DNA from: Octopus bimaculoides
Taxonomy: Eukaryota
Assembly: GCF_001194135.2 (NCBI RefSeq)
Contig: NC_068993.1
Span: forward strand, 39,426,048-39,476,351
DNA: 50,304 bases
Direction of reading: 5' to 3'
A program made the translations under genes and the position numbers. The notes below the pieces were generated by a model. It ran no database searches and had not been told where the DNA came from. It worked only from the letters and a program-made list of their open reading frames with translations. The stretch's first letter is position 1, and the number at the start of each line of letters is the position of its first letter. Shown in pieces: positions 24,673-24,994 of the stretch.

Positions 24673-24835
24673 AACCATGGACGGGGGACCATTCGGCTGG
24701 TCTGTCGATGAAGAGCGTGGCTATCCGCGTGAACTGATGCGAATTGCAGGACTCAGTGGACATCGACACCTCGAACGCACATTACGACCCCGGGATCCCA
24801 TCGTCTCGGGGCTCCGTCCGGTCGAGAGGAGACTT
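24673..24835 (+). pseudogene. Full-length 5.8S rRNA-derived processed copy (no ITS/18S/28S flanks)
   Basis: Collinear with metazoan 5.8S: TCGGCT, GTCGATGAAGA, GAATTGCAGGAC, CATCGACAC.TCGAACGCAC. Helices CGTGG/CCGCG and CCCCGGGA/TCTCGGGG still pair. Confidence 0.9.
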
Positions 24836-24994
24836 AAGGCGGCGAGCTGGCAGAAACGTTAGCGCGCCGGGCGAAATGCTTAGCGGTATTTCGTCTGCCG
24901 TTACATTCAGAGTTCAAATTCCGCCGAGGTCGACTTTGCCTTTCATCATTTCGGAGTCAATAAATTACGTATCAGTTACGCACTGGGTCGATGT
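24836..24994 (+). mobile_element. SINE family B, intact 5' end, 3'-truncated
   Basis: Starts AAGGCGGCGAGCTGGCAGAAACGTTAGC, the same start as other B copies. Contains GAGTTCAAATTCC and GTCGACTTTGCCTTTCATC. Confidence 0.9.

What the first reader, a model, noticed from the sequence alone, without database searches (positions are those of the whole stretch)
24673..24994. Full-length 5.8S rRNA fused directly to the 5' end of a SINE: a chimeric retrocopy or a 5.8S-headed SINE family
Seen: about 160 nt align collinearly with metazoan 5.8S from the mature 5' end to the mature 3' end, with no ITS, 18S or 28S sequence on either side. The next base begins an intact SINE B head (AAGGCGGCGAGCTGGCAG). Differences from vertebrate 5.8S preserve pairing (CGCAG/CTGCG becomes CGTGG/CCGCG, and the GC-rich hairpin still pairs), which suggests a faithful copy of a divergent functional rRNA rather than a decayed one. 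Known: non-LTR RTs make small-RNA/retroelement chimeras (U6-L1), and R2 RT jumps from the 5' end of one template to the 3' end of the next. Inference: the RT finished the SINE RNA and jumped onto mature 5.8S. If this junction is multi-copy, it would be a 5.8S-headed SINE, a head type not among the usual tRNA/5S/7SL origins.
Basis: partly seen in the sequence, partly recalled or inferred. Interest (0 to 1): 0.82.

Follow-up and report, generated by a model that had tools for sequence, protein, structure and literature searches.

The report
5.8S rRNA retrocopy inside SINE mosaic
A complete copy of mature 5.8S ribosomal RNA sits end to end between pieces of four short retrotransposons (SINEs), most likely because one reverse transcriptase hopped from RNA to RNA during a single insertion; it is an old, single-locus molecular fossil rather than a new kind of mobile element.

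Summary
Window 24673-24831 is a full-length Rfam 5.8S hit (83.7 bits, threshold 42, model 1-154/154), and it is the only one in the window. It runs to about 24835 and carries no ITS, 18S or 28S sequence. The next base, 24836, is position 1 of a SINE family ("B") that has 11 other significant matches in the window, none next to 5.8S.

The 5.8S copy is the middle of a five-part, same-strand mosaic with no filler:
- SINE C, positions 1-41
- SINE A2, positions 1-~122
- 5.8S, complete
- SINE B, positions 1-161 of ~217
- SINE A, positions 35-335, followed by its tail

Every upstream piece starts at its own 5' end and lacks its 3' end. Only the last piece has a tail.

Best reading: one target-primed reverse transcription event with three or four template switches. 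This is an extreme case of the known chimeric retropseudogenes, with 5.8S as an unusual partner. SINE B is about 13% diverged from its consensus, so the insertion is old.

The "5.8S-headed SINE family" idea is not supported, because 5.8S is internal and single-copy in the window. Genome-wide copy number and the host's real 5.8S sequence could not be obtained; the public collections searched hold none of this genome's repeats. I rate it a new member of a known kind, of moderate interest.

The parts
24507..24547 (+). SINE C head, family positions 1-41, 3'-truncated. Homology to one particular copy extends upstream to 24486.
   Evidence: It matches the first 41 nt of copy 23746-23786(-) at 33/41 ungapped; the 99.99th percentile over all window positions is 21/41. 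BLAST gives E 3e-6. The family profile alone is marginal, E 0.09. The inverted repeat with 23746-23807 is 62 nt long and 79% complementary.
24548..24671 (+). SINE A2 head, positions 1 to about 122 of an A-type SINE with a conserved central domain, 3'-truncated inside that domain. It carries an A-box-like TGGCTTAGTGG (24561-24571) and a B-box-like GGTTTCGATTCC (24604-24615).
   Evidence: It aligns to positions 1-113 of the full A copy at 40632-40966 with 72% identity. It is not the same element as the downstream A piece: head-unique versus tail-unique sites are 16:4, p=0.012. The motifs are read directly from the sequence.
24672..24672 (+). One A at the A2/5.8S junction. It could be the last base of A2, a 5' extra base of 5.8S, or an untemplated addition.
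   Evidence: Read directly from the sequence. The Rfam alignment starts at 24673.
24673..24835 (+). Complete retrocopy of mature 5.8S rRNA, with no ITS on either side.
   Evidence: RF00002, 83.7 bits, model 1-154/154 at 24673-24831. ACTT at 24832-24835 matches the mature 3' end of human 5.8S as written from memory. Single copy in the window.
24836..24995 (+). SINE B, positions 1-161 of about 217. The 5' end is intact; the last ~56 nt and the tail are missing.
   Evidence: nhmmer with a profile of six other copies: profile positions 2-161 align to 24837-24995, E 7e-46. It is 86.6% identical to the consensus of the other copies. Most other copies reach the family's 3' end.
24996..25296 (+). SINE A, positions 35-335. 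It is 5'-truncated and has an intact 3' end.
   Evidence: 85.7% identical over 301 nt to the full copy at 40632-40966.
25297..25309 (+). Short hexamer-repeat tail. With the last CTTTAC of the SINE A body (25291-25296) it reads CTTTAC CTTCAC CTTTAC C over 25291-25309.
   Evidence: Read directly from the sequence. The other A copy ends in CTCTTTAC followed by a T-run.
25310..25354 (+). TA/CA/TG microsatellite, either part of the tail or the target site. It contains the weak candidate target-site duplication TATATAC..ACATAC.
   Evidence: The TSD test is not significant: 3.5% and 10.6% of controls score as high.

Best explanation
The region 24507-25309 is a dead multi-part chimeric retro-insertion made in one target-primed reverse transcription event by a LINE reverse transcriptase that switched RNA templates several times.

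Proposed order of synthesis (inferred):
1. The enzyme primed on the 3' tail of a SINE A RNA at a TA-rich site.
2. It copied SINE A back to nucleotide 35.
3. It moved to a SINE B RNA at about nucleotide 161 and copied it to its 5' end.
4. It jumped onto the 3' end of a mature 5.8S rRNA and copied all of it.
5. It jumped to about nucleotide 122 of a second A-type SINE RNA (A2) and copied it to its 5' end.
6. It probably jumped once more, to nucleotide 41 of a SINE C RNA.
7. The cDNA was then joined to the chromosome.

The 3'-truncated acceptors may have been processed, tail-less small SINE RNAs, which would make every jump after the first an end-to-end jump (inference).

Shown: the identity, extent, order and orientation of the five parts, the absence of filler, and the absence of their 3' remainders nearby. 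Inferred: the single event, the order of jumps and the enzyme.

The insertion is old (SINE B about 13% from its consensus) and nothing indicates a function.
For: 1. 5.8S is complete from the mature 5' end to the mature 3' end with no ITS. Those ends exist only in processed RNA, so the copy came from RNA.
2. All five parts lie on the + strand and abut with 0-5 unassigned bases.
3. C, A2, 5.8S and B each begin at position 1-2 of their family. C, A2 and B lack their 3' ends and tails. Only the last part, A, has a 3' end and tail, and it is the only 5'-truncated part. Copying 3'-to-5' with template switches predicts exactly this pattern.
4. In the rest of the window, SINE B and C copies almost always keep their 3' ends: all 9 other C matches end at profile position 150 or later, and 8 of 11 other B matches at 198 or later.
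5. No 3' remainder of C, A2 or B lies downstream of 25354, so simple nesting does not explain the structure.
6. The A2 head and the A tail are not two halves of one element split with a long duplication: 16 versus 4 unique sites, p=0.012.
7. The four junction sequences are unique in the window and there are no assembly gaps nearby.
8. LINE reverse-transcriptase template switching that yields bipartite and tripartite chimeras with full-length small RNAs at the 5' side is documented (PMC2104539; bioRxiv 10.1101/2025.02.02.635956). The same mechanism is invoked for module exchange in mollusc SINEs (PMC4758252).
Against: - No convincing target-site duplication flanks the mosaic, because the flanks are low-complexity TA/CA sequence.
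- Three of the four acceptors were entered at internal positions. Classical chimeras carry full-length 5' partners (feature i in PMC2104539), so the processed-RNA explanation is untested.
- The held papers I read describe at most three parts, so four or five parts in one event is an extrapolation.
- The C head shares 21 nt of upstream flank with the inverted C copy 678 nt away. This hints that the outermost piece might have a DNA-level origin or a different boundary.
- Only one locus, in a gapped draft assembly, could be examined. No orthologous empty site, host rDNA or long reads were available.
Confidence: 0.6

Rival explanations
1. Stepwise nesting plus deletion. A bipartite 5.8S-SINE B chimera (one template switch) and the other SINEs arrived in separate insertions, each landing inside the previous element. 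One or more later deletions, perhaps mediated by the microsatellite, removed all the displaced 3' remainders.
For: SINEs are very dense here: more than 20 copies of three families in 50 kb. SINE insertions are normally 5'-complete, so intact 5' ends are also expected under nesting. No clear TSD brackets the whole mosaic. A microsatellite sits exactly at the 3' edge.
Against: It needs three successive insertions into the previous insert, all in the same orientation, plus a deletion ending exactly after the SINE A tail. No remainder of C, A2 or B is left downstream. SINE B would still need its own 3' end to have inserted, yet it is cut at 161 exactly where the 5'-truncated A begins.
Confidence: 0.15
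2. This locus is one copy of an amplified composite SINE family. The mosaic arose once by template switching, then spread from the Pol III promoter of the A2 head using the SINE A tail, so 5.8S is a body module of a SINE.
For: The mosaic has the anatomy a SINE needs: a tRNA-like head with A- and B-box-like motifs (24561-24571, 24604-24615), a body, and a 3' tail of a SINE family. There is no T4 run from 24548 to 25460, against 3.3 T4+ runs expected over the 806-nt mosaic (24507-25312), so Pol III could read through. Modular 'jigsaw' SINEs are known in molluscs (PMC4758252).
Against: The window holds one 5.8S copy and one of each junction, against 11 other B and 9 other C matches. An element of about 760-800 nt would be long for a SINE. 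The C head upstream of A2 is not explained by A2-driven transcription. Exact-pattern scans for the junction in public collections found nothing, but those collections also lack this genome's SINEs, so that result is uninformative.
Confidence: 0.12
3. Assembly artefact: a short-read assembler joined unrelated repeat-containing reads.
For: The window is a gapped draft scaffold with 14 N runs, mostly next to microsatellites.
Against: The mosaic lies in an ungapped stretch, 22477-28696. Graph misjoins occur inside shared repeat sequence. Here the four junctions join unrelated sequences with at most 4 nt in common, and they fall exactly at RNA termini.
Confidence: 0.03
4. A DNA-level rDNA fragment (an orphon) or a functional variant 5.8S gene.
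For: The sequence still scores well above the 5.8S threshold and most helices pair.
Against: No ITS1, ITS2, 18S or 28S is present on either side. The ends coincide with the mature RNA ends. 22 of 79 highly conserved positions are changed and two pairs are broken. It is embedded in SINE pieces.
Confidence: 0.02

Closest known systems
Chimeric retrogenes/retropseudogenes made by LINE reverse-transcriptase template switching (U6-L1 and related bipartite chimeras; tripartite WEIRD-MgSINE-MGL in Magnaporthe; B2-U6-L1 in mouse; PMC2104539)
   Same: A full-length small cellular RNA is fused directly, in the same orientation and without filler, to the next retro-element. The most 3' part is 5'-truncated and carries the tail. 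More than one switch can occur in one event.
   Different: The small RNA here is 5.8S, which I did not find reported in the papers searched. There are four or five parts rather than two or three. Three parts (B, A2, C) are 3'-truncated, which means internal entry or processed acceptor RNAs. Flanking direct repeats could not be shown. The host is a mollusc, and the partner LINE is not L1 or MGL as far as can be told.
28S rRNA/LINE-1 and 5S rRNA/LINE-1 chimeric insertions in primates (bioRxiv 10.1101/2025.02.02.635956)
   Same: Ribosomal RNA is captured by a LINE reverse transcriptase at the 5' side of a retro-insertion.
   Different: Those are fragments of 28S or truncated, often antisense 5S joined to L1. 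Here a complete sense-strand 5.8S is joined to SINEs. That paper does not list 5.8S.
SINEs with rRNA-derived parts: SINE3/5S-Deu SINEs (5S head) and SINE28 (28S 3' end), as cited in PMC4758252
   Same: rRNA sequence is incorporated into a SINE-like retroposon, and module acquisition is attributed to template switching.
   Different: Those are multi-copy families, and the 5S head supplies a Pol III promoter. Here 5.8S is internal, has no Pol III promoter role, and only one copy is seen.
End-to-end template jumping by the R2 reverse transcriptase (Bibillo and Eickbush; from my own knowledge, not read here)
   Same: The enzyme reaches the 5' end of one RNA and continues on the 3' end of another, sometimes adding an extra base. 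This matches the B-to-5.8S jump and the single ambiguous A at 24672.
   Different: That is an in vitro property of a site-specific element. No R2 element or 28S target is present here.

Membership tests
5.8S rRNA (Rfam RF00002) | Covariance-model score above the curated gathering score over the full model | tested here: met
   83.7 bits against a threshold of 42, model 1-154/154, E 2.3e-19.
5.8S rRNA (functional gene in an rDNA unit) | Flanked by ITS1/18S and ITS2/28S | tested here: not met
   The flanks are SINE A2 and SINE B. No other rRNA hit is found in 15000-35000 at E<=1.
5.8S rRNA (functional gene in an rDNA unit) | Conserved core positions and helices intact | tested here: inconclusive
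   22 of 25 pairs are standard and 2 are broken; 22 of 79 highly conserved consensus positions differ. No host 5.8S was available for comparison.
Template-switch chimeric retropseudogenes (features i-v of PMC2104539) | (i) The 5' part is a full-length copy of a cellular RNA | tested here: met
   Met for 5.8S, which is complete. Not met for B (1-161 of ~217), A2 (1-~122) or C (1-41), which are 5'-complete but 3'-truncated.
Template-switch chimeric retropseudogenes (features i-v of PMC2104539) | (ii) The 3' part is a 5'-truncated copy ending in the element's tail | tested here: met
   SINE A positions 35-335 plus a hexamer-repeat tail.
Template-switch chimeric retropseudogenes (features i-v of PMC2104539) | (iv) Parts are joined directly in the same transcriptional orientation | tested here: met
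   All five parts are on the + strand, with 0-5 unassigned bases at each junction.
Template-switch chimeric retropseudogenes (features i-v of PMC2104539) | (v) The whole chimera is flanked by short direct repeats | tested here: inconclusive
   The best candidate is TATATAC[TTCT]ACATAC. 3.5% of same-geometry controls and 10.6% of random upstream 30-mers score as high. The 5' boundary itself is uncertain: 24486 or 24507.
SINE family with a 5.8S-derived head | Many dispersed copies share the 5.8S-SINE junction | tested here: not met
   Within the window there is 1 copy, and none of the 11 other SINE B matches is next to 5.8S. Genome-wide this is not testable: the collections searched contain none of this genome's SINEs.
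SINE family with a 5.8S-derived head | The rRNA-derived part sits at the 5' terminus and supplies the promoter | tested here: not met
   Two tRNA-like SINE heads (24507-24547 and 24548-24671) lie upstream of 5.8S.
tRNA-derived SINEs (families A/A2, B, C of this window) | Repeated dispersed copies with common ends and a simple-repeat tail | tested here: met
   B has 12 and C has 9 significant profile matches. A has one full copy plus the focal piece. Tails are ATT/GTT repeats for B and TA/TG repeats for C.
tRNA-derived SINEs (families A/A2, B, C of this window) | The head is recognisable as tRNA-like | tested here: inconclusive
   A- and B-box-like motifs can be read by eye. ARAGORN finds no tRNA, and Rfam finds no tRNA match at E<=10 in 24450-25360.

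The most novel reading that the evidence does not exclude
The mosaic is, or descends from, a transcribed composite SINE that carries a whole 5.8S rRNA as a body module. It would be driven by the A2 Pol III head and mobilised through the SINE A tail, so Pol I-derived rRNA sequence would have been recruited into an amplifying SINE family in octopus-like genomes. Alternatively, the local LINE reverse transcriptase may habitually chain four or more small RNAs per insertion, which would supply the raw material for 'jigsaw' SINE evolution.
Probability: 0.12. Interest if true: 0.7.

Novelty: new member of a known kind. Interest (0 to 1): 0.45.

Why it matters
- It would add mature 5.8S rRNA, a Pol I product normally locked in the large ribosomal subunit, to the RNAs that a LINE reverse transcriptase can capture. 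I found no such case in the papers searched.
- It would show three or four consecutive template switches in one insertion, more than the tripartite cases in the held papers I read.
- It would catch, at a single locus, the process thought to shuffle SINE modules in molluscs, in a SINE-rich genome of the octopus type.
- Practically, it is a useful marker locus. An orthologous empty site would give the event's boundaries and age.
- It has no sign of cellular function.

Tried and rejected
1. Finding other copies through spurious ORFs. The two ORFs spanning the junction (24744-25010 and 24677-24862) are not on record. A homology search with the 88-aa ORF found nothing.
2. Fetching related genomic DNA through the LINE RT fragment at 46662-47024(-). 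Only four distant hits (45-62% identity) came back, on ENA or Logan contigs, none named. I did not pursue them.
3. Exact-pattern scans.
   - The junction 23-mer found nothing in metagenome or prokaryote-genome contigs.
   - A pattern specific to the focal 5.8S helix gave 6 metagenome loci, none of which is a 5.8S by Rfam, so they are chance matches.
   - SINE C and SINE B cores found nothing in genome or viral contigs.
   - These collections therefore say nothing about copy number.
4. ARAGORN, and Rfam tRNA models applied to the SINE heads, gave no hits.
5. Thermodynamic folding of the 5.8S copy gave a z-score of -1.0, which is uninformative.
6. The target-site duplication search was not significant.
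7. Model rejected: one SINE A split by a 5.8S-B insertion with an 88-bp duplication. The head has 16 unique sites against 4 for the tail (p=0.012), and it is further from the reference copy (72% against 86%, p=0.0025).
8. Model rejected: simple nesting. No displaced 3' remainders are present.
9. A shared breakpoint hotspot in SINE B at about 160 was considered because of the copies at 29119-29271 and 25628-25787. Alignment shows that both continue as diverged B sequence, so there is no hotspot.
10. Literature searches for 5.8S-derived SINEs, 5.8S retropseudogenes or octopus 5.8S sequences returned nothing relevant.
11. Other Rfam matches at relaxed threshold (mir-297, mir-3149 and similar) are TA/TG microsatellites.

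Full report
**1. The observation**

An Rfam scan of all 50,304 bases gives one hit above a gathering score. It is RF00002 (5.8S rRNA) at 24673-24831 on the + strand, at 83.7 bits against a threshold of 42, E 2.3e-19, covering model positions 1-154 of 154 with no truncation (repeated).

- Of the 25 model base pairs, 22 are standard pairs, one is the consensus A.G, and two are broken (C.A and A.C).
- The four bases after the model end (ACTT, 24832-24835) match the (G/A)CUU terminus of human 5.8S. I wrote that reference from memory; the global alignment to it is 120/155 = 77% identical.
- No second 5.8S-like stretch exists in the window, and no 18S or 28S fragment was found in 15000-35000.

Both ends therefore coincide, within 1-4 nt, with the ends of the processed RNA. 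Those ends are not a unit in rDNA, so the copy came from mature RNA.

**2. The neighbour on the 3' side**

The sequence from 24836 (AAGGCGGCGAGCTGGCAG...) belongs to a repeat family I call SINE B, about 217 nt long with ATT/GTT-type tails.

- A profile built from six other window copies finds 11 further significant matches besides the focal one.
- It aligns its positions 2-161 to 24837-24995, E 7e-46.
None of the other B copies has 5.8S upstream.
- The junction has a 4-nt ambiguity. Several B copies are also preceded by CT(T/G), so ACTT could belong to either partner.

**3.

- **SINE B is cut short.** It stops at position 161 of about 217. From 24996 the sequence is positions 35-335 of another SINE, A (85.7% identical to the full copy at 40632-40966). 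This piece ends in CTTTAC-type hexamer repeats (25291-25309) and then a TA/CA/TG microsatellite (25310-25354).
- **A second SINE head lies directly upstream of 5.8S.** Bases 24548-24671 are positions 1 to about 122 of an A-type SINE, A2. It has A-box-like and B-box-like motifs and breaks off inside the conserved central domain.
- **A third SINE head lies upstream of that.** Bases 24507-24547 match the first 41 nt of a third family, C (about 165 nt, TA/TG tails, 9 other matches). The match is 33/41 ungapped to the best-preserved copy, against a 99.99th percentile of 21/41 over all window positions. The family profile alone is only marginal, E 0.09.

The structure is therefore, on one strand and with no filler:
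[C 1-41][A2 1-~122][5.8S complete][B 1-161][A 35-335 + tail]

It lies in an ungapped stretch of the scaffold, 22477-28696.

**4. Mechanism**

Every upstream part begins at its own 5' end and lacks its 3' end and tail. Only the last part has a 3' end and tail, and it is the only 5'-truncated part. A reverse transcriptase that primes on the last RNA's tail, copies 3'-to-5', and switches to a new RNA several times would leave exactly this pattern.

Elsewhere in the window, B and C copies keep their 3' ends and are, if anything, 5'-truncated. All 9 other C matches end at profile position 150 or later. 8 of 11 other B matches end at 198 or later, and two of the remaining three simply continue as diverged B sequence.

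Alternatives tested:
- **Simple nesting** predicts displaced 3' remainders of C, A2 and B downstream. None is present.
- **One A element split by a 5.8S-B insertion with an 88-bp target duplication** is rejected. In the 88-column overlap the head has 16 unique sites and the tail 4 (binomial p=0.012). The head is also further from the reference copy: 72% against 86%, p=0.0025.
- **Misassembly** is unlikely, because the junctions join unrelated sequences at RNA termini rather than inside shared repeats.

Remaining weaknesses:
- The flanking direct repeat expected for a single event cannot be shown. The best candidate, TATATAC[TTCT]ACATAC, is matched or beaten by 3.5-10.6% of controls, because the flanks are low-complexity sequence.
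- Three acceptors were entered at internal positions, unlike the full-length 5' partners of classical chimeras. Processed tail-less SINE RNAs would reconcile this, but that is inference.
- Nesting followed by a deletion ending at the microsatellite cannot be excluded.

**5. Age and the 'faithful copy' idea**

The focal B part is 86.6% identical to the consensus of the other copies, and the A part is 85.7% identical to its sister copy.

- The 5.8S copy is 77% identical to human 5.8S (from memory) and differs at 22 of 79 highly conserved Rfam consensus positions.
- Several of its differences from human are states I recall as typical of protostomes or molluscs (GAAGAGCG, GCGTGAA, ACATCGACACC, CACATT). 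This is recall, not a test.
- Allowing for those, its decay is in the same range as its neighbours, which fits one event.
- It keeps 17 CpGs and shows no GC-to-AT bias: 17 AT-to-GC changes against 12 GC-to-AT.
- One A-U to G-C double change keeps a pair, but one such event among 25 pairs is not compelling.

Whether the source rRNA was unusual cannot be decided without the host's rDNA.

**6. Copy number**

This could not be tested beyond the window.

- Protein-database routes through junction-spanning ORFs and through a LINE RT fragment found nothing usable.
- Exact-pattern scans of metagenome, prokaryote-genome and viral contigs found neither the junction nor the window's abundant SINE cores.
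- The six metagenome matches to a 5.8S helix pattern are not 5.8S.

These negatives reflect the collections, not the genome.

**7. Comparison with what is known**

LINE-mediated chimeric retrogenes have five published features: a full-length small RNA at the 5' side, a 5'-truncated 3' part, random truncation sites, direct same-sense fusion and flanking repeats. Tripartite cases are attributed to double template switches (PMC2104539).

- A recent primate survey lists U6, U3, U5, 5S, tRNA, 28S, 7SL, 7SK and Y RNAs as L1 chimera partners, but not 5.8S.
- A survey of tailless retropseudogenes included 5.8S among its queries and, apart from a few 18S, 28S and snoRNA cases, reports none from abundant nucleolar RNAs.
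- Template switching is the accepted route for SINE module exchange in molluscs.
- SINEs of the tRNA-Core and tRNA-Deu types dominate octopus repeats. This fits the window, although the organism was not identified here.
- My searches found no 5.8S-derived SINE or 5.8S chimera.

**8. Verdict**

- The chimera interpretation is supported and extended to a four- or five-part mosaic.
- The 5.8S-headed SINE family idea is not supported.
- This is a new member of a known kind, unusual in its partner RNA and in its number of parts. It is seen at one old locus and has no indicated function.
- Interest 0.45.

Noticed in passing
window 23746-23807 (-) and 24486-24547 (+): This is a 62-nt inverted repeat, 79% complementary, with 678 nt between the arms. 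The C head of the mosaic and the full C copy at 23622-23786 share not only the SINE head but also 16/21 nt of the flank upstream of it. GTTTTATATAC occurs only at these two places in the window. The cause could be a 5'-extended C transcript, a shared TA-rich target, or local DNA copying at integration.
   Followed up: partly
window 24673-24705: The first 33 positions of the 5.8S copy are more diverged than the rest: 12/32 against 23/123 mismatches to human 5.8S written from memory, Fisher p=0.03. This is unexplained.
   Followed up: partly
window 29119-29424 and 29735-30102: There are two same-strand pairs of SINE B pieces: B ~8-185 followed by B 73-216, and B 2-216 followed 13 nt later by B 68-210. 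They could be further SINE-SINE fusions, or a duplicated pair.
   Followed up: partly
window 25628-25787 (-): An old, diverged SINE B-like copy lies in the opposite orientation about 270 nt downstream of the mosaic (profile positions 6-169, E 1.9e-12).
   Followed up: partly
window 46662-47024 (-): A 120-aa ORF is a fragment of a non-LTR reverse transcriptase. Its only database relatives (45-62% identical, Pfam PF00078) are unnamed proteins on ENA and Logan contigs. It could be a relic of the LINE that moves these SINEs, but its clade was not determined.
   Followed up: partly
window 24548-25460: There is no run of four or more T on the + strand from the A2 head to 150 nt past the mosaic, where about 3.3 T4+ runs are expected over the 806-nt mosaic (24507-25312). 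A Pol III transcript starting at the A2 head would not meet a terminator inside the mosaic.
   Followed up: yes
whole window, e.g. 9021-9082, 9260-9833, 20003-20595, 41455-41758, 47702-48063: Fourteen N gaps are present, mostly bordered by TA/TG microsatellites, which marks a short-read draft scaffold. Relaxed Rfam matches to mir-297, mir-3149, mir-466 and similar are these microsatellites, not genes.
   Followed up: yes
window 40407-40966: A SINE B copy (40407-40605, - strand) and the full SINE A copy (40632-40966, + strand) lie head to head about 26 nt apart, next to another B copy at 39951-40158 (-). This is a dense SINE cluster.
   Followed up: no
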